Positions 16,372 through 21,973 of a DNA stretch of 64,000 bases are shown here, one piece after another. The notes below the pieces were generated by a model. That model was given only the letters and a program-made list of their open reading frames with translations. It was not told where the DNA came from and did no database searches. Location: assembly GCA_025603075.1 (NCBI GenBank), contig MU626260.1, positions 275,380 through 339,379 of the forward strand, in the 5' to 3' direction. The stretch's first letter is position 1. Each line of letters begins with the position of its first letter. Position numbers and translations under genes: made by a program. This stretch comes from Neoconidiobolus thromboides FSU 785 (taxonomy: Eukaryota > Fungi > Entomophthoromycota).

Positions 16372-17670
16372 TTGCTAATTGCTTTACTCTAGTGTAATTT
16401 TAATATTATTTAACTTGCTAATTAAATTTCTTCAATTGTACATATTTTAATTAAAGATAATTTATACAATATCATAGTTAATTTCTTTGTGGAGTATTTT
16501 TCTAGAGTGACTGTTTTTTTGATGTCTAAGGAATATTCATAAATTATACTGTAATTCTTTTAAAATACTTGGTTATTAATTGGTCAAGTTTTAAAGTTTA
16601 TCCTTGACTCATCTTGGAATAATTTAAAGTCAAAAAATATGAGATCCCAAAAAAAATCAACTAAACGGAAAATAGTTAAAAAAATTTGTTAATAAAGTGG
16701 CTAAATTATTCAAGTTCTAAAATTGATAAATCAAATTAAATAGAAATATATTTTATATAAAATCAAAAAATTTATTTCAATTATTTTAGCATAAATAGTG
16801 ATATAAAAAATATGTTTATTCTATAAATTATAGTTTAAGATCAAGATATTGATATTCTTTCTTTTTCTAATAGGCTAAATAGTAATAAATTTGATATAAA
16901 AGCTTTAGTTTATAAATTAATTTTTATAGTTTTTTATTCATTTAAATGATTTTTATTTAATTAAAGTAAAATGGTACAAACAGAACATTTACTTATTAAA
17001 TACAACAAATTACGCCTAAATTATATATTATATAGCAATAAAAGATATTTAAAGTAATTGTAGAATTTATCTAAAAAACTGTTAATATAATGACAATTTT
17101 TGATAGAGGCTTTTGATGAACACTGATTCTAACGTTAAGAATTATTTAATATTCTATTTAAAATAATTGAACAAAATTAATATATTCTATTTATAAAAAA
17201 TGTAAGATAAGGATAGTATAGTAATAAATCTATAGTTAATTTATACTAATTGAGCTGTGACAATAAATGGTGGAGTGAAGACACCTCCATTTATTATCTT
17301 GGATTTTAAAAACTAAGGCTTTTTGTGAAGTTGTGTAAGAATGTATAGGTAATTGGAAAGAATAAAACAAGTATAGGGATAATGTTAAAGTTACTATGGA
17401 GGCAAGATGGTGCAGAATGCGGCTAAACAATAAAAAGGGGCTTTTAATTATTTATTGGTGACTTTAAGGTAACCGTGATTAACATGATGGCTTAATTGTT
17501 GTAAAACAGTTCTTTTAATATGTTATTTTTAAATTTATCATTAAAATTATCATGTATCTTTTTTATATAACATTTGTTATTTTGTTTTTAAGTTTGACTA
17601 TTTTTTTATGATAAAGTAGATTTTTTGAATGCTTTTCAATGTCATTGTGCTTTTTTAGTATATTTAATAT

Positions 17671-17770
17671 GAGGATATGTTTTTGTGTTTAAGTATTTTA
17701 CTAACAATTTTCCGACTCAAATGACATTTAAAGAATGGAAAAATTGATAAAGCTAAAAAGAACACTCCCC
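17671..17770 (+). mobile_element. MITE family A copy (diverged)
   Basis: GAGGATATG...CACTCCCC; core TTTTACTAACAATTTTCCGACTCAAAT. Confidence 0.75.
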
Positions 17771-17958
17771 TATATTCTGTTTTTATATCAGGAAGGTGAT
17801 GACAATTCATTTATTTTTATAACTTTAGCAAATAAATACTTGCTTAAAAAGCCTTTGTTTTTTAAGAGATTAAAGAGCCAATAACAACATTTAAAAAACA
17901 ATCCCACTGTAATTTGAAAAAATAAAACAAAAGATTGATTTGGCTTTGAAAATATAAG

Positions 17959-20045
17959 ATGGGTAAAAGAAACAAAAAGAACTCAATAAAAGAAAAAGAA
18001 GTGGATAATGAAGTGGATAAAAAAGAACATAGCATAAAGAGTAGTCAGAGTTATCTTAAATTTATTAGCTTAATTCAATCAAATCGGAACATGATGCGTT
18101 TAAAAGATAGAAAGGATGTACCAGAGTTGTAAGTATACTATTACTATTTTAGTGTTATTTGTTCAACCCAATATTAGTTATGTAACACAAACTGTAGTTC
18201 CAGAAATTCATAGGTTAGCCGATGAATTTTTAAAAGCGGTTGACGCCAAGCTTCCAAAATTGGATGAGGAGCCAAAAGAGATCACTGAGTCAAAGGATAA
18301 TAATGATAAGAAAGTAAATAGTGATAAGAAAGGAAATGAAAAGAAAGCAAGTGATAAAAAAGCGAAAGATAAGAAAGCTAATGGTGACAAGAAGGCAAAT
18401 GATAATAAAAAAGGAAACGATGATAAAAAAATAAATGATGAATTTATAGATGAAGAAGAAATAATAACCGAAGTTAAGAAAGTAGTATCTATATATAATT
18501 AAAAAAATATAACTAATATTAAATAGGAAGAACTTACATTACAATTTGGACATATCAATATTGCAAGGAAAGCTACCTTGAAGCAGCTTTGTTGCGTTAT
18601 CCTTCCAGTTGATGTGAAAGCAATTTATCAAGATTGTGAGTTATTTTATTTTGTTTCAATACACTTTATTTATATTTTAATTATAAGATTTATTAGATTC
18701 ATTTCAAGAATTAATTTACAAATGCCACAGTTGTGGAGTTAAAATCATTTATGCTTTAAATACAAGATATTTGAATAAAAGGTATTCAAAAATATATAAA
18801 GATTGTTATTCCATACAAAGCATTGGGGTGCCACTCAAATTTCAAGACTTGAAAGAGTTTCAAGAGTTAGATAGGGTATGTAGTAGATTACGTTACCATT
18901 ATGTTATGGAATTTAGTAAAAAAAGTATATATCCAAATAAATATAAACAGAGTCCATTATGGGTTGCAGCATACTATGGGATAACATGTCCAAATATCAT
19001 TTATCAATGTTTAAGTCATGATCGTAAACAGTTGTTACATAGAGATTATCAATACAAATGTACACCATTAGAAATAGCATATAGACGAAATCAAACGTTT
19101 TTTATTAGAATGTTTGAAAAATTGATTGACAAAGAATTACCAATTGACGAAGAAGGGGAAAAAGAAAAACTTAATCAATTAGTAGCTTCTTATTTTTCAG
19201 TCAATAGCAATATATTATGTAACGAAAATGATAAGCCAAGGCCATTAAGTTTTGTTCCAGATCCAATGAATTTAAAATTTATCAATGACAATTATTCAAC
19301 TTCGAACATAATAACATTAACTGGAAGAATGGATAGTAGAGAAATCAGTGAAAGGTTTTTTAGATTATACTTTTATAATCAAAATTTATTCAATACTTTG
19401 ATTTCAAAAATATTACCACCCCACCATCGCAGGCTAGCTTGGATTGTCACAAGGTTTGCGTTAGTATCTAAAGATCCAGCTACTCTCGTTGCAGCATTAA
19501 ATTATTATAATTTAAGGTTTTCAAATGTATTATATAACCATTGTAATTTAATCACACGTAGTAAAACAAGTTCCTTATTTAAACCCATGAGTATAATTAA
19601 TAATAATGTCGTCAAAGAATATGATTTAAGCTCTGAAACACTGTTAGTGTTAGCAGCAAAAATGAATTTACAAGATCAGGTTTTAATTATACTAATACAT
19701 ATCTTAAAAATATATTCTAACAAAATAAATTACGCTTTTCCTTTTTCAAGTCATATGGTATTAACTAATAGAGCTGTTACCCCTTACGACGATGGTAGAG
19801 TCAACTATAAATATTTAAAAGATGTGTTACCTATGCATTATTTTAACAAAAGAGATTCAGATGGATTCAATGCAATTGACTATGCAGTTAAATTCAATAT
19901 GACCTATGTCATCCCCTGGTTTGTTTATTATTTAGGGTTCTCTTCAGGTTTTGGTAACCCACTTACTGTCTCTTTTGATAAACCTTTATTTGAAAGACCC
20001 CCTTTCGATAAATCTTCATTTGATAAACCCTTTTCTTTTTTATAA
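17959..20045 (+). CDS. SBP2 (SECISBP2)-like L7Ae-domain protein fused to ankyrin-like repeats; 4-exon model, ~647 aa
   Basis: Exons 17959-18128, 18178-18484, 18527-18635 and 18688-20045 total 1944 nt, in frame, with GT-AG introns. YVTQTVVPEIHRLADEFLKAV, FGHINIARKATLKQLCCVILPVDV, LIYKCHSCGVKIIYALNTRYL and IQSIGVP...F...R..Y align by eye with the SBP2 RNA-binding domain. Ankyrin-like motifs SPLWVAAYYG, TPLEIAYRRN, LLVLAAKMN and DGFNAIDYAVKFN follow. Confidence 0.7.
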
Positions 20046-20353
20046 AGTTTTGTTTGGTAGATTTGGTACTTTCTATTTATATTAATTTCAATTGTACCTT
20101 TATTTCGATTTTACTACTGTTGATAAAATAAAAATAAGCTCATTTGCTCATTTCGGTCTCATCCTTATTTAATCGAATTGGAGAGGAATCCCGATTTGAT
20201 AATACTTTACAAACTTAGAATGATAAAGTGGAATTATCTGAAAACTTGAACAATTAATTAAGCACAAATAAAACAAACTGTTACTGTTATTAAATTCATG
20301 TAGTATATGTAATTAAATATTTAGTTTAGTGTGAACTATCATGAGATCACGAA

Positions 20354-20427
20354 GTTTCCGTGGTGTAGTTGGTTATCACATCTGTCTAACACACAGAAGG
20401 TCTCCAGTTCGAATCTGGACGGAAACA
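20354..20427 (+). tRNA. tRNA-Val(AAC)
   Basis: Acceptor GTTTCCG/CGGAAAC, anticodon arm TCTGT-CTAACAC-ACAGA, T-loop TTCGAAT; TTTTT terminator. Confidence 0.97.
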
Positions 20428-20806
20428 TTTTTGACATTTGTCCATATTTAAAAATGGTGATAAATTAATATGGAGATCAAGCTGCTTTATTTTTGTTGAA
20501 TGTGTTTCTGTGGAAGCTTTATTTGATATGAATGTCAAGAGAAAAATGATATAATAATATCAAAGGATAATGCCATCGTCTAGTTTTTTTTAGTAAATTT
20601 AGTCCAATCGAATAGTTTAATAGGTTTTATTAATGTAAATAAGTAACATTTGGTCCATCATATGTGAAGTTCAGAGCTATATTAAGCAATTACTAGAGCA
20701 TCATTTGACACTAGTTAGCTAAATGATTTTAAGAAACTATTATAAAAAAACGATGGCAAAAGAATAATATAAAAAGGATAAAGATTAAGTGATAAATAAT
20801 TTTAAA

Positions 20807-21973
20807 ATGAGATCTACTATTTTTATAACAAGTATTTTACTTCTAAAGTCCATTGTTTTGGCTAATCTTGCTCCCCTTCATTCCCCTACTAATGGTAATA
20901 TAGTTGATCAAAGTTACATTATCAATCTTAAGCCAAATACAAAATCCAGTTTAGATGCTCATGTTAATTATGTCAAGTCCTTATTTATTGAGCGTAATGG
21001 TATAAATAAGATCCAAGATGTTTATAATCATATTGGAAAATCGTACAGTGCTTATTTGACTGAAGATGTGTTGCAAAAGGTTCGTAGCCTGAGTGATGTT
21101 GCTTTTATCGAAAAAAATGTCAAAGTTAAATTAGATTCCGTCCAAACAAATGCCCCATGGGGTATATCTCGCATTTCCCAACGTAATTTTACTAATACAT
21201 TTACTTACACTTATGACGGAAATGGTGAAGGTGTAACTGTCTATGTCATTGATAGTGGTATTTTGATAACTCATCCAGAGTTTGAAGGAAGAGCTAAATT
21301 TGGTGCAAGGTTTACTACAGACACTGATGATGATGGAGATGGTCTTGGTCATGGTACCCACTGTGCTGGTACTGTAGGCTCAAAAACTTATGGAGTAGCA
21401 AAAAAAGTAAATTTAGTAGCCGTTAAAGTCTTTGATAATGATGGCAATGGTAATTTTGCTAATATTATTTCTGCTATAAACTGGGTTGTTGGTGATAAAA
21501 GGGGTGCAAAAGGTAATGTTATTAGTATGTCCCTTGGTGGTCCTGTTTCAGAATCTGTTAATTCAGCTATTGAAACTGCTTATCAAAAAGGGTTTGTGAT
21601 TGTTGTTTCTGCTGGTAATGATAGTAGAGACGCATGTACTAAGTCACCCGCTTCTTCTCCTAGTGCTATAACTGTAGCTGCATCGACTGCTAATGATGAT
21701 GTATGGAGCCTCTCAAATACTGGCAAATGTGTCGATATATTTGCCCCTGGCTCACTTATAGTTTCTACTTACAATGATGGTAAAACAGATACCCTTTCTG
21801 GCACCTCTATGTCTACGCCACATGTTGCTGGGCTTGCTGCTTATTATCTTTCGAAAGAAGTTTTAACTAATTCCCAAATAACTCAAAAGATTTTAAAGAC
21901 CGCAACAAAAGATGCTATCAAGAAAAACAAACCAGATACAGTTAATCTTTTAGCTTACAACAATATTGTTTAA
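20807..21973 (+). CDS. Secreted subtilisin-like serine protease (S8, proteinase K type) with I9 propeptide
   Basis: Signal peptide from ATG 20807; propeptide; mature APWGISRI. Catalytic motifs VIDSG, GHGTHCAG and SGTSMSTPHVAG; oxyanion SAGN. Confidence 0.97.
   Translation: MRSTIFITSILLLKSIVLANLAPLHSPTNGNIVDQSYIINLKPNTKSSLDAHVNYVKSLFIERNGINKIQDVYNHIGKSYSAYLTEDVLQKVRSLSDVAFIEKNVKVKLDSVQTNAPWGISRISQRNFTNTFTYTYDGNGEGVTVYVIDSGILITHPEFEGRAKFGARFTTDTDDDGDGLGHGTHCAGTVGSKTYGVAKKVNLVAVKVFDNDGNGNFANIISAINWVVGDKRGAKGNVISMSLGGPVSESVNSAIETAYQKGFVIVVSAGNDSRDACTKSPASSPSAITVAASTANDDVWSLSNTGKCVDIFAPGSLIVSTYNDGKTDTLSGTSMSTPHVAGLAAYYLSKEVLTNSQITQKILKTATKDAIKKNKPDTVNLLAYNNIV

What the first reader, a model, noticed from the sequence alone, without database searches (positions are those of the whole stretch)
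17959..20045. Hidden SBP2 (selenocysteine SECIS-binding protein)-like L7Ae domain fused to ankyrin repeats in a fungus
The ORF track splits this locus, but three GT-AG introns give one in-frame ~647-aa protein. Its blocks align almost without gaps to the mammalian SBP2 RNA-binding domain as I recall it. YVTQTVVPEIHRLADEFLKAV matches YCSQMLSKEVDACVTDLLKEL. GHINIARKATLKQLCCVILPVDVKAI matches GLREVLKHLKLKKLKCVIISPNCEKI. LIYKCHSCGVKIIYALNTRYL matches IIDYACEQNIPFVFALNRKAL. IQSIGV...F...R..Y matches VSVVGI...F...R..Y. Selenocysteine use is known in only a few early-diverging fungi, and canonical SBP2 has no ankyrin repeats. Either this lineage has unrecognised Sec machinery, or an SBP2 relic has been repurposed as a new RNA-binding/ankyrin adaptor.
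Basis: partly seen in the sequence, partly recalled or inferred. Interest (0 to 1): 0.85.

Follow-up and report, generated by a model that had tools for sequence, protein, structure and literature searches.

The report
Fungal L7Ae-fold protein fused to ankyrins
This is a real, expressed, three-intron gene of the fungus Neoconidiobolus thromboides that joins a very diverged L7Ae-type (RNA kink-turn-binding) fold to degenerate ankyrin repeats; it belongs to a small unnamed family of early-diverging fungi, and nothing tested here shows that it is the selenocysteine factor SBP2.

Summary
The gene model is confirmed. RNA contigs from four runs carry all three GT-AG junctions and a poly(A) tail. GenBank already annotates the same splicing as hypothetical protein KAI9298981.1 (601 aa; 646 aa from the first ATG).

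The L7Ae reading holds, but only indirectly. The protein alone hits neither Pfam L7Ae nor any solved L7Ae or SBP2 chain. It is, however, clearly homologous (44 bits; best of 2000 shuffles 5.6) to seven unnamed 280-320-aa proteins from uncultured chytrid-like fungi. All seven carry Pfam L7Ae followed by true ankyrin repeats. The stored ESM Atlas model of residues 109-253 also matches L7Ae-fold clusters, with SBP2 best at TM 0.65.

The SBP2 assignment is unresolved:
- Without the window protein, the family profile prefers archaeal L7Ae (25.1 bits) over SBP2 (22.8).
- With it, SBP2 becomes the top solved match (31.3 against 28.1 bits).
- No SID similarity and no RFQDR motif were found.
- The N-E-x-x-K RNA-contact motif reads I-N-I-A-R.
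- A 68-residue Lys/Asp/Asn-rich insert separates helix 1 from the core.
- No Entomophthorales are among the nine known Sec-using fungi.

Verdict: a new L7Ae-ankyrin architecture, probably an RNP adaptor. Descent from SBP2 is possible but unproven.

The parts
17959..18128 (+). Exon 1 (codons 1-56 plus 2 nt). Basic N-terminus MGKRNKK...; the GenBank model starts at the Met at 18094.
   Evidence: Splice model. Junction 18128|18178 seen in the RNA contigs of 4 runs. In-frame stop at 17947 and no other ATG between 17900 and 17959. The contig of run X6 starts near 17917.
18129..18177 (+). Intron 1, 49 nt, GTAAGT...TATTAG
18178..18241 (+). Helix 1 of the L7Ae-like domain (residues 57-78 of the 646-aa form, FYVTQTVVPEIHRLADEFLKAV)
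   Evidence: Matches the YV..VP.E.. helix 1 of the family and of archaeal L7Ae. Removing the insert lets the family HMM extend to it, for only +2.5 bits, which is weak.
18242..18445 (+). 68-residue Lys/Asp/Asn-rich low-complexity insert (21 K, 12 D, 9 N; DKK-type repeats) between helix 1 and strand 1
   Evidence: Composition. Absent from all seven relatives. Carries in-frame 3-nt indels and non-synonymous changes in related strains.
18482..18526 (+). Intron 2, 45 nt, GTAGTA...AAATAG
18533..18902 (+). L7Ae-like core (residues about 161-266; interrupted by intron 3). Conserved Gly166, then the V-I-L cluster at +16..+18, then CHS..., YALN and SIGV.
   Evidence: Atlas structure match to L7Ae-fold clusters, TM 0.50-0.65. 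Homology to the PF01248-positive family. Profile match to SBP2 668-771 and to archaeal L7Ae.
18636..18687 (+). Intron 3, 52 nt, GTGAGT...AG; acceptor at 18688
   Evidence: same acceptor in the GenBank protein
18951..19898 (+). Degenerate ankyrin-repeat region. It starts at the family-wide junction motif SPLWVAAYYG (residues 283-292) and runs to GFNAIDYAVKFN (587-598).
   Evidence: All 15 listed substitutions in folded parts in related strains are synonymous, and 12 of them lie in this region.
19971..20045 (+). C-terminal FDKP-type short repeats and the stop codon (TAA 20043-20045). Poly(A) is added near 20059.

Best explanation
The locus encodes a 646-aa (annotated 601-aa) protein of Neoconidiobolus thromboides. 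It is the most diverged known member of an undescribed family of early-diverging fungi in which an L7Ae-type alpha/beta/alpha domain is followed directly by ankyrin repeats, through a conserved SP[IL]W[IV]AA junction. In this copy a 68-residue KKD-like low-complexity insert has been placed between helix 1 and the core, and the ankyrin part has grown to about 330 degenerate residues. Shown here: the gene is spliced, polyadenylated and expressed; the substitutions that could be read in related strains are all synonymous in the folded parts; and the protein is homologous to the L7Ae-ankyrin family. Inferred: it acts as an adaptor. The L7Ae-like face would dock on a kink-turn-like RNA or RNP, most likely nuclear or nucleolar given the basic N-terminus and the KKD-like tract. 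The ankyrin solenoid would recruit a protein partner. It is not an orthologue of SBP2 working in selenocysteine insertion. Which eukaryotic L7Ae paralogue the domain descends from (SBP2, Snu13/Nhp2 type, or another) is not resolved.
Against: RNA binding is untested, and the canonical contact motif N-E-x-x-K reads I-N-I-A-R here, so kink-turn binding may be altered or lost. The L7Ae-only family HMM scores the window protein at just 7.7-10 bits, so the domain assignment leans on the collinear homology and on a low-confidence Atlas model (mean pLDDT 0.50). My own single-sequence AF2 run failed (pLDDT 33). The nucleolar and adaptor role is inference from composition and domain logic only. SBP2 is the top solved match when the window protein is in the profile, so descent from SBP2 is not excluded. 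The substitution list was partial: 40 rows were shown and 85 hidden.
Confidence: 0.6

Rival explanations
1. The domain descends from SBP2. Either it is a relic kept and repurposed (with ankyrins added) after this fungal lineage lost selenocysteine, or it is a working, highly diverged SBP2 in a lineage with unrecognised Sec machinery.
For: With the window protein in the profile, human SBP2 (7zjw_B, residues 668-771) is the best solved match, at E 1.8e-6 and 31.3 bits. Adding the window protein raises SBP2 by 8.5 bits but archaeal L7Ae by only 3.0 and Snu13 by 1.8. The SBP2 cluster is the best structural neighbour of the Atlas model, with TM 0.65 over 134 residues. Shared details include C-[VI]-I-[LI], [YF]ALN and a longer b2-a3 loop. 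SBP2 is the best eukaryotic paralogue in every PDB profile search. SBP2 is known to be fast-evolving and highly diverged in fungi (bioRxiv 10.1101/314781), and a functional SBP2 without SID exists in C. elegans (PMC4114682).
Against: No SID similarity and no RFQDR. The family without the window protein prefers archaeal L7Ae and has L7Ae-like spacing from helix 1 to Gly. The window protein alone has no detectable similarity to SBP2. The Glu of the RNA-contact motif is replaced. No Sec-using Entomophthorales are known (PMC10386755). There is no tRNA-Sec or SECIS in the window, and none of the other notes of this scan on this genome that I could search mentions selenoproteins. A 3-bit lead is within the noise of such searches.
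Confidence: 0.2
2. The L7Ae-like domain no longer binds RNA and serves, like Gadd45, as a protein-protein module. The whole protein would then be a purely protein scaffold.
For: The N-E-x-x-K contact motif is I-N-I-A-R in the window protein (read from the sequence; alignments). Its L7Ae region is very diverged (7.7-10 bits to the family L7Ae HMM; no Pfam hit). The best-conserved block in the family is the domain junction and the first ankyrin repeat, not the RNA face.
Against: The relatives keep G-x-[NK]-[QE]-V-x-[RK], close to the L7Ae and SBP2 motif. The invariant Gly and the core spacing are kept. A Lys-rich tract beside the domain would favour nucleic-acid contact.
Confidence: 0.15
3. There is no L7Ae domain in the window protein. 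The resemblance would be chance in an AT-rich, low-complexity orphan, with only the ankyrin part real.
For: No Pfam or PDB hit for the protein alone. AF2 single-sequence pLDDT is 33. The Atlas model has mean pLDDT 0.50.
Against: The BLAST and HMM homology to the family begins inside the stretch that Pfam calls L7Ae in P0002 (P0002 residues 85-138 of the Pfam match 66-138) and is far above shuffles. Adding the window protein strengthens the profile's L7Ae and SBP2 hits instead of diluting them. Eight different L7Ae/eRF1-type clusters are its structural neighbours.
Confidence: 0.05

Closest known systems
SECIS-binding protein 2 (SBP2/SECISBP2), RNA-binding domain (human, PDB 7ZJW chain B)
   Same: L7Ae-type core with the invariant Gly and the same Gly-to-hydrophobic-cluster spacing. 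Best solved match of the family profile that includes the window protein (31.3 bits, E 1.8e-6, residues 668-771). Best structural neighbour of the Atlas model (TM 0.65). A Lys-rich stretch lies just N-terminal of the core.
   Different: No SID and no RFQDR motif. Ankyrin repeats are attached, which SBP2 lacks. The Glu of R-E-V-x-K is replaced (I-N-I-A-R). No significant pairwise similarity. The host lineage is not known to use selenocysteine.
Archaeal ribosomal protein L7Ae and eukaryotic Snu13/15.5K (kink-turn binders)
   Same: Best match of the family without the window protein (M. jannaschii L7Ae 25.1 bits, Snu13 21.6). TIGR03677 matches from model position 1, including helix 1 (YV..VP.E..). 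Same distance from helix 1 to Gly in the relatives. The relatives carry an N/K-Q/E-x-x-R/K motif.
   Different: Those are single-domain proteins of about 120-130 aa in ribosomes and sno/snRNPs. Here the domain is fused to ankyrin repeats, carries a 68-residue insert, and in the window protein has lost N-E.
C. elegans SBP2 (scbp-2), an SBP2 made of the RNA-binding domain only (PMC4114682)
   Same: Shows that an L7Ae-type SBP2 can work without SID, so lack of SID alone does not exclude an SBP2-type role.
   Different: It occurs with a complete Sec pathway and a selenoprotein (TRXR-1). It has no ankyrin repeats. No sequence comparison could be made here.
Unnamed L7Ae-ankyrin proteins P0002-P0008 (280-320 aa) from environmental assemblies of chytrid-like fungi
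   Same: Same collinear architecture and the same junction motif SP[IL]W[IV]AA.[NY]G. Significant homology to the window protein.
   Different: Half the length, with no K-rich insert. Clear Pfam L7Ae and Ank hits. Intronless genes in compact genomes, always downstream of a barwin-like gene. Only 22-28% identical to the window protein.

Membership tests
L7Ae/L30e/S12e/Gadd45 superfamily (Pfam PF01248) | Profile match at or above the Pfam gathering score | tested here: not met
   No PF01248 hit for P0001 or its N-terminal 260 residues even at E <= 10. All seven homologues do match, best E 4.9e-8, and the one member whose score was listed (P0002, 28.1 bits) passes the 22.1-bit cut-off.
L7Ae/L30e/S12e/Gadd45 superfamily (Pfam PF01248) | Invariant glycine about 15 residues upstream of a three-residue hydrophobic cluster (L7Ae core motif as described in PMC2746813) | tested here: met
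   FG(166)HINIARKATLKQLCC-VIL: the cluster lies at +16..+18, the same spacing as in SBP2 and M. jannaschii L7Ae in the alignments.
L7Ae/L30e/S12e/Gadd45 superfamily (Pfam PF01248) | Alpha/beta/alpha sandwich fold | tested here: inconclusive
   The Atlas model of residues 109-253 matches L7Ae-fold clusters at TM 0.50-0.65, but the model has mean pLDDT 0.50. My AF2 single-sequence model failed. The homologue P0002 shows the full topology at pLDDT 60-80.
L7Ae/L30e/S12e/Gadd45 superfamily (Pfam PF01248) | Kink-turn contact motif N-E-x-x-K at the start of helix 2 (own knowledge of L7Ae/15.5K complexes) | tested here: not met
   The window protein has I-N-I-A-R. Relatives have N-Q-V-x-[RK] or K-E-V-x-R, and SBP2 has R-E-V-L-K.
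SBP2 / SECISBP2 | Sec incorporation domain (SID, human 408-545) N-terminal of the RNA-binding domain (PMC2746813) | tested here: not met
   Only 56 residues precede helix 1. phmmer of the whole protein against the PDB, which holds full-length SBP2 (7zjw_B, 854 aa), gives no hit. Caveat: C. elegans SBP2 also lacks SID (PMC4114682).
SBP2 / SECISBP2 | RFQDR motif (654-658) between the FRDY motif and the core Gly676 (PMC2746813) | tested here: not met
   No R[FYW]Q[DE]R anywhere in the protein. That position is taken by the K/D/N-rich insert. The relatives have 31 residues from Tyr to Gly, against 44 in SBP2.
SBP2 / SECISBP2 | L7Ae domain closer to SBP2 than to any other L7Ae subfamily | tested here: inconclusive
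   Profile with the window protein: SBP2 31.3 bits, archaeal L7Ae 28.1. Profile without it: L7Ae 25.1, SBP2 22.8. No tree could be built because no SBP2 or Snu13 sequences were retrievable.
SBP2 / SECISBP2 | Co-occurrence with tRNA-Sec, eEFSec, PSTK, SecS, SPS2 and selenoprotein genes with SECIS | not testable with these tools
   Only the 64-kb window is available. It holds three ordinary tRNAs and no SECIS or tRNA-Sec. The literature lists nine Sec-using fungi, none of them Entomophthorales (PMC10386755; bioRxiv 10.1101/314781).
Ankyrin repeat proteins (Pfam clan Ank) | Repeat profile match and helical-solenoid fold | tested here: inconclusive
   Ank_2 scores 18.5 bits, below the 27.3 cut-off. 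ESM features score 0.97 and all structural neighbours are ankyrin proteins, but TM is only 0.31-0.41. The first repeat is homologous to the true Ank repeats of P0002.
Unnamed L7Ae-ankyrin family (P0002-P0008) | Collinear L7Ae domain, SP[IL]W[IV]AA junction and ankyrin repeats, with significant full-length profile score | tested here: met
   44.2 bits over residues 131-291 against a maximum of 5.6 in 2000 shuffles. BLAST 5e-12. phmmer E 5.5e-4 in 1.84e9 proteins.

The most novel reading that the evidence does not exclude
The L7Ae-ankyrin family is what became of SBP2 in fungal lineages that gave up (or nearly gave up) selenocysteine. On this reading the SECIS-binding module was kept, lost its SID and RFQDR elements, gained ankyrin repeats, and now tethers some other kink-turn RNA to a protein partner. 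In the bolder form, N. thromboides or the chytrid-like carriers still run a cryptic, highly diverged Sec system with this protein as its SECIS binder.
Probability: 0.17. Interest if true: 0.75.

Novelty: new variant of a known kind. Interest (0 to 1): 0.4.

Why it matters
L7Ae-type domains are the universal readers of RNA kink-turns in ribosomes, snoRNPs, the spliceosome, RNase P and the selenocysteine machinery. In the well-studied members known to me (own knowledge, not tested here) they occur almost always as single-domain proteins or, in SBP2, with a dedicated SID. A conserved fusion to an ankyrin solenoid, found so far only in early-diverging fungi, would be a new way of coupling a kink-turn RNA to a protein partner. 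It gives a concrete protein to test by CLIP, localisation and pull-down. If the domain proves to descend from SBP2, it would also be a rare molecular trace of how Sec machinery is recycled after the repeated losses of selenocysteine in fungi. If not, the finding is a modest addition to the catalogue of L7Ae architectures.

Tried and rejected
- Pfam on single exons and on the whole protein gave no L7Ae hit.
- phmmer of the whole protein and of residues 98-260 against the PDB gave nothing relevant.
- AF2 without an alignment was unusable, at pLDDT 33.
- AF2 of the homologue P0002 worked (pLDDT 64). However, Foldseek against Swiss-Prot AFDB, the Atlas shape search and VIA-wide against the PDB were all swamped by ankyrin hits, so they gave no ranking of L7Ae subfamilies.
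- A word-based search with the C-terminal 451 residues found only the protein itself.
- Scans for relatives in viral contigs, JGI metagenomes and prokaryotic genomes found none. This argues against a viral or bacterial origin of the compact P0002 contigs.
- There is no synteny between those contigs and the window.
- A second read laying on a shorter stretch, meant to give the full substitution list, failed to lay the contig. The dN/dS statement therefore rests on the partial list.
- Vms1/ANKZF1 (an eRF1-like domain plus ankyrins) was considered and rejected: it carries the eRF1 domain-2-like VLRF1 fold, not L7Ae (own knowledge), and no such Pfam hit appeared.
- eRF1/Pelota domain 3 gave weaker structural matches (TM 0.35-0.40) than L7Ae.
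- The published Mariotti et al. 2019 paper (PMC6551623) is not held, so I used the preprint.
- The literature search for L7Ae-ankyrin fusions found nothing pertinent.
Full report
**Source and gene model.** The window is AT-rich (26% G+C). Its protein at this locus is identical over the 451 residues queried (the exon 4 part) to GenBank KAI9298981.1, 'hypothetical protein K502DRAFT_322583' of Neoconidiobolus thromboides FSU 785, an entomophthoralean fungus. Joining four exons (17959-18128, 18178-18481, 18527-18635, 18688-20045) across three GT..AG introns of 49, 45 and 52 nt gives one open frame of 646 aa. The GenBank protein uses the same three junctions but starts at the Met at 18094, giving 601 aa. 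Assembled RNA contigs of four public runs carry the three joints, and one ends in a poly(A) run after 20059. One of these runs is 100% identical to the window; the others come from two related organisms about 1-5% diverged. An in-frame stop lies at 17947, and 17959 is the only ATG between 17900 and 17959. One contig starts near 17917, so the 646-aa form is the likelier product.

**The protein alone.** Pfam gives no L7Ae hit for the whole protein or its first 260 residues, even at E <= 10. It gives only a sub-threshold Ank_2 hit, at E 0.003. phmmer against all PDB sequences, which include full-length human SBP2 (7zjw_B), finds nothing relevant for the whole protein or for residues 98-260.

**The bridge family.** An exhaustive phmmer search of residues 100-260 against 1.84 billion representative proteins finds one relative, P0002, at E 5.5e-4.
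- P0002 and six further proteins (P0003-P0008; 280-320 aa; 57-73% identical to P0002) are unnamed products of SRA and ENA assemblies.
- Their N-terminal parts all hit Pfam Ribosomal_L7Ae, best E 4.9e-8. Seven of the eight rows scanned (these seven plus the window protein) hit the archaeal L7Ae model TIGR03677, best E 4.2e-7, with L30e weaker at 0.0024.
- An AF2 model of P0002 (pLDDT 64 overall, 60-80 in the L7Ae part) has the a1-b1-a2-b2-a3-b3-a4-b4-a5 order of the L7Ae sandwich.
- The window protein aligns collinearly with them, from strand 2 of the L7Ae domain through a strongly conserved junction (SPLWVAAYYG against SPIWIAAYYG) into the first ankyrin repeats. Pairwise BLAST gives E 5e-12. 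The full-length family HMM scores 44.2 bits, while 2000 shuffles of the same stretch never exceed 5.6.
- The L7Ae part alone is very diverged, at 7.7-10 bits.

The stored ESM Atlas model of the window protein gives separate support. Residues 109-253 match clusters that are 100% PF01248: a vertebrate SBP2 cluster (TM 0.65, 134 aligned), an algal L7Ae+zinc-finger cluster (0.61) and Nhp2 (0.50). eRF1/Pelota domain 3 scores lower. Residues 225-601 look like ankyrin repeats by features (0.97) and by every structural neighbour.

**Who carries the family.** In the five relatives' contigs examined (four looked up from the listed relatives, plus a further 320-aa copy beside P0009), the L7Ae-ankyrin gene is intronless and lies closely downstream (spacers of roughly 10-160 nt) of a conserved barwin-like gene product of about 203 aa; one contig holds only its C-terminal end. 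The named homologues of that neighbour are all Chytridiomycota, such as Polychytrium, Entophlyctis, Spizellomyces and Batrachochytrium, at no more than about 53% identity. No relatives turned up in viral contigs, JGI metagenomes or 185,579 prokaryotic genomes. The carriers are therefore most likely uncultured chytrid-like fungi with compact genomes. As far as these searches reach, the family is confined to early-diverging fungi and has no name or literature.

**SBP2 or not.** Profile searches against the PDB give the following scores.

| Profile | Archaeal L7Ae | SBP2 | Snu13 | Call |
|---|---|---|---|---|
| Seven relatives only | 25.1 bits | 22.8 bits | 21.6 bits | 88 (also 35) |
| Relatives plus window protein | 28.1 bits | 31.3 bits (E 1.8e-6, residues 668-771) | 23.4 bits | 56 |

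The window protein thus adds 8.5 bits to SBP2 but only 3.0 to L7Ae. This is a real if small SBP2-like flavour (C-[VI]-I, [YF]ALN, a longer b2-a3 loop), and SBP2 is the best eukaryotic paralogue in all three searches.

Several points argue against membership.
- SBP2 is defined by the SID (408-545), the FRDY and RFQDR motifs ahead of the core, and Gly676 (PMC2746813).
- No SID similarity is detectable, and there is no RFQDR.
- In the relatives, helix 1 lies 31 residues before the Gly, as in archaeal L7Ae, not 44 as in SBP2.
- In the window protein the space between helix 1 and the core is filled by a 68-residue Lys/Asp/Asn-rich insert (21 K) that no relative has.
- The kink-turn contact motif (N-E-x-x-K in L7Ae, R-E-V-L-K in SBP2, N-Q/K-E in the relatives) reads I-N-I-A-R.

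Lack of SID is not decisive by itself, because C. elegans SBP2 is a 153-aa RNA-binding domain only (PMC4114682). The test that would decide, whether Sec machinery is present in this genome, cannot be run here. The window has only three ordinary tRNAs and no SECIS or tRNA-Sec. None of the other notes of this scan on this genome that I could search mentions selenoproteins. The nine fungi known to use Sec are seven Harpellales plus two others, with no Entomophthorales (PMC10386755; bioRxiv 10.1101/314781).

**Constraint.** Twenty differences are listed between the window and the roughly 5% diverged relative.
- All 15 that fall in folded parts (helix 1 and the ankyrin region) are synonymous third-position changes.
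- The five non-synonymous ones fall in the basic N-terminus and the K-rich insert.
- The indels listed inside the insert are multiples of three.

The list was partial (85 rows were hidden), and a second attempt to get it in full failed. Still, the pattern is that of a protein under purifying selection with a free-evolving low-complexity tract.

**Most likely function.** What is shown is an expressed, constrained protein with an L7Ae-type domain joined to an ankyrin solenoid. What is inferred is the following. The L7Ae-like face docks on a kink-turn-like RNA or RNP, and the ankyrin repeats hold a protein partner. The basic N-terminus and the KKD-like tract resemble the tails of nucleolar snoRNP proteins (own knowledge) and point to the nucleus or nucleolus. 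Because the window copy has lost the N-E pair, its RNA binding may be altered or lost, which makes a Gadd45-like protein-only role the main functional rival.

**Verdict.** The SBP2 and selenocysteine interpretation is not supported as membership and stays open only as a question of descent. The thing itself is a new domain architecture within a well-known superfamily: moderately interesting, testable, and not evidence for hidden Sec use.

Noticed in passing
L001-L004 (for example L003:1681-3303, L002:2103-3666): In environmental contigs of uncultured chytrid-like fungi, the L7Ae-ankyrin gene always sits closely downstream (spacers of roughly 10-160 nt) of a conserved barwin-like gene product of about 203 aa that has a hydrophobic C-terminal tail. 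The genes are intronless and tightly packed, which suggests a clade with unusually compact genomes. Named homologues of the neighbour are all Chytridiomycota.
   Followed up: partly
window 18242-18445: The Lys/Asp/Asn-rich insert is polymorphic among related strains and species. It shows in-frame 3-nt insertions (after 18434 and 18437) and non-synonymous changes, while the folded parts show only synonymous differences in the rows listed.
   Followed up: partly
window 20354-20427: A tRNA-Val(AAC) gene lies about 300 nt downstream of the poly(A) site of the gene, on the same strand (ARAGORN, and Rfam at 64.5 bits).
   Followed up: no
window 20789-21973: A 394-aa intronless ORF with a signal-peptide-like start and subtilisin catalytic motifs (DSG..., HGTHCAG, SGTSMSTPHVAG). 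It is probably a secreted S8 protease, as expected for an insect-pathogenic or saprobic entomophthoralean fungus.
   Followed up: no
window 17614-17958: The RNA contig of the run identical to the genome extends at least 340 nt upstream of the ATG at 17959, across several short upstream ORFs. The contig of a related organism starts near 17917. This is either a long 5' leader with uORFs or read-through from upstream.
   Followed up: no
window 19971-20042: The C-terminal tail is made of short FDKP-type repeats (SFDKPLFERPPFDKSSFDKPFSFL). They have no counterpart in the relatives and their role is unknown.
   Followed up: no
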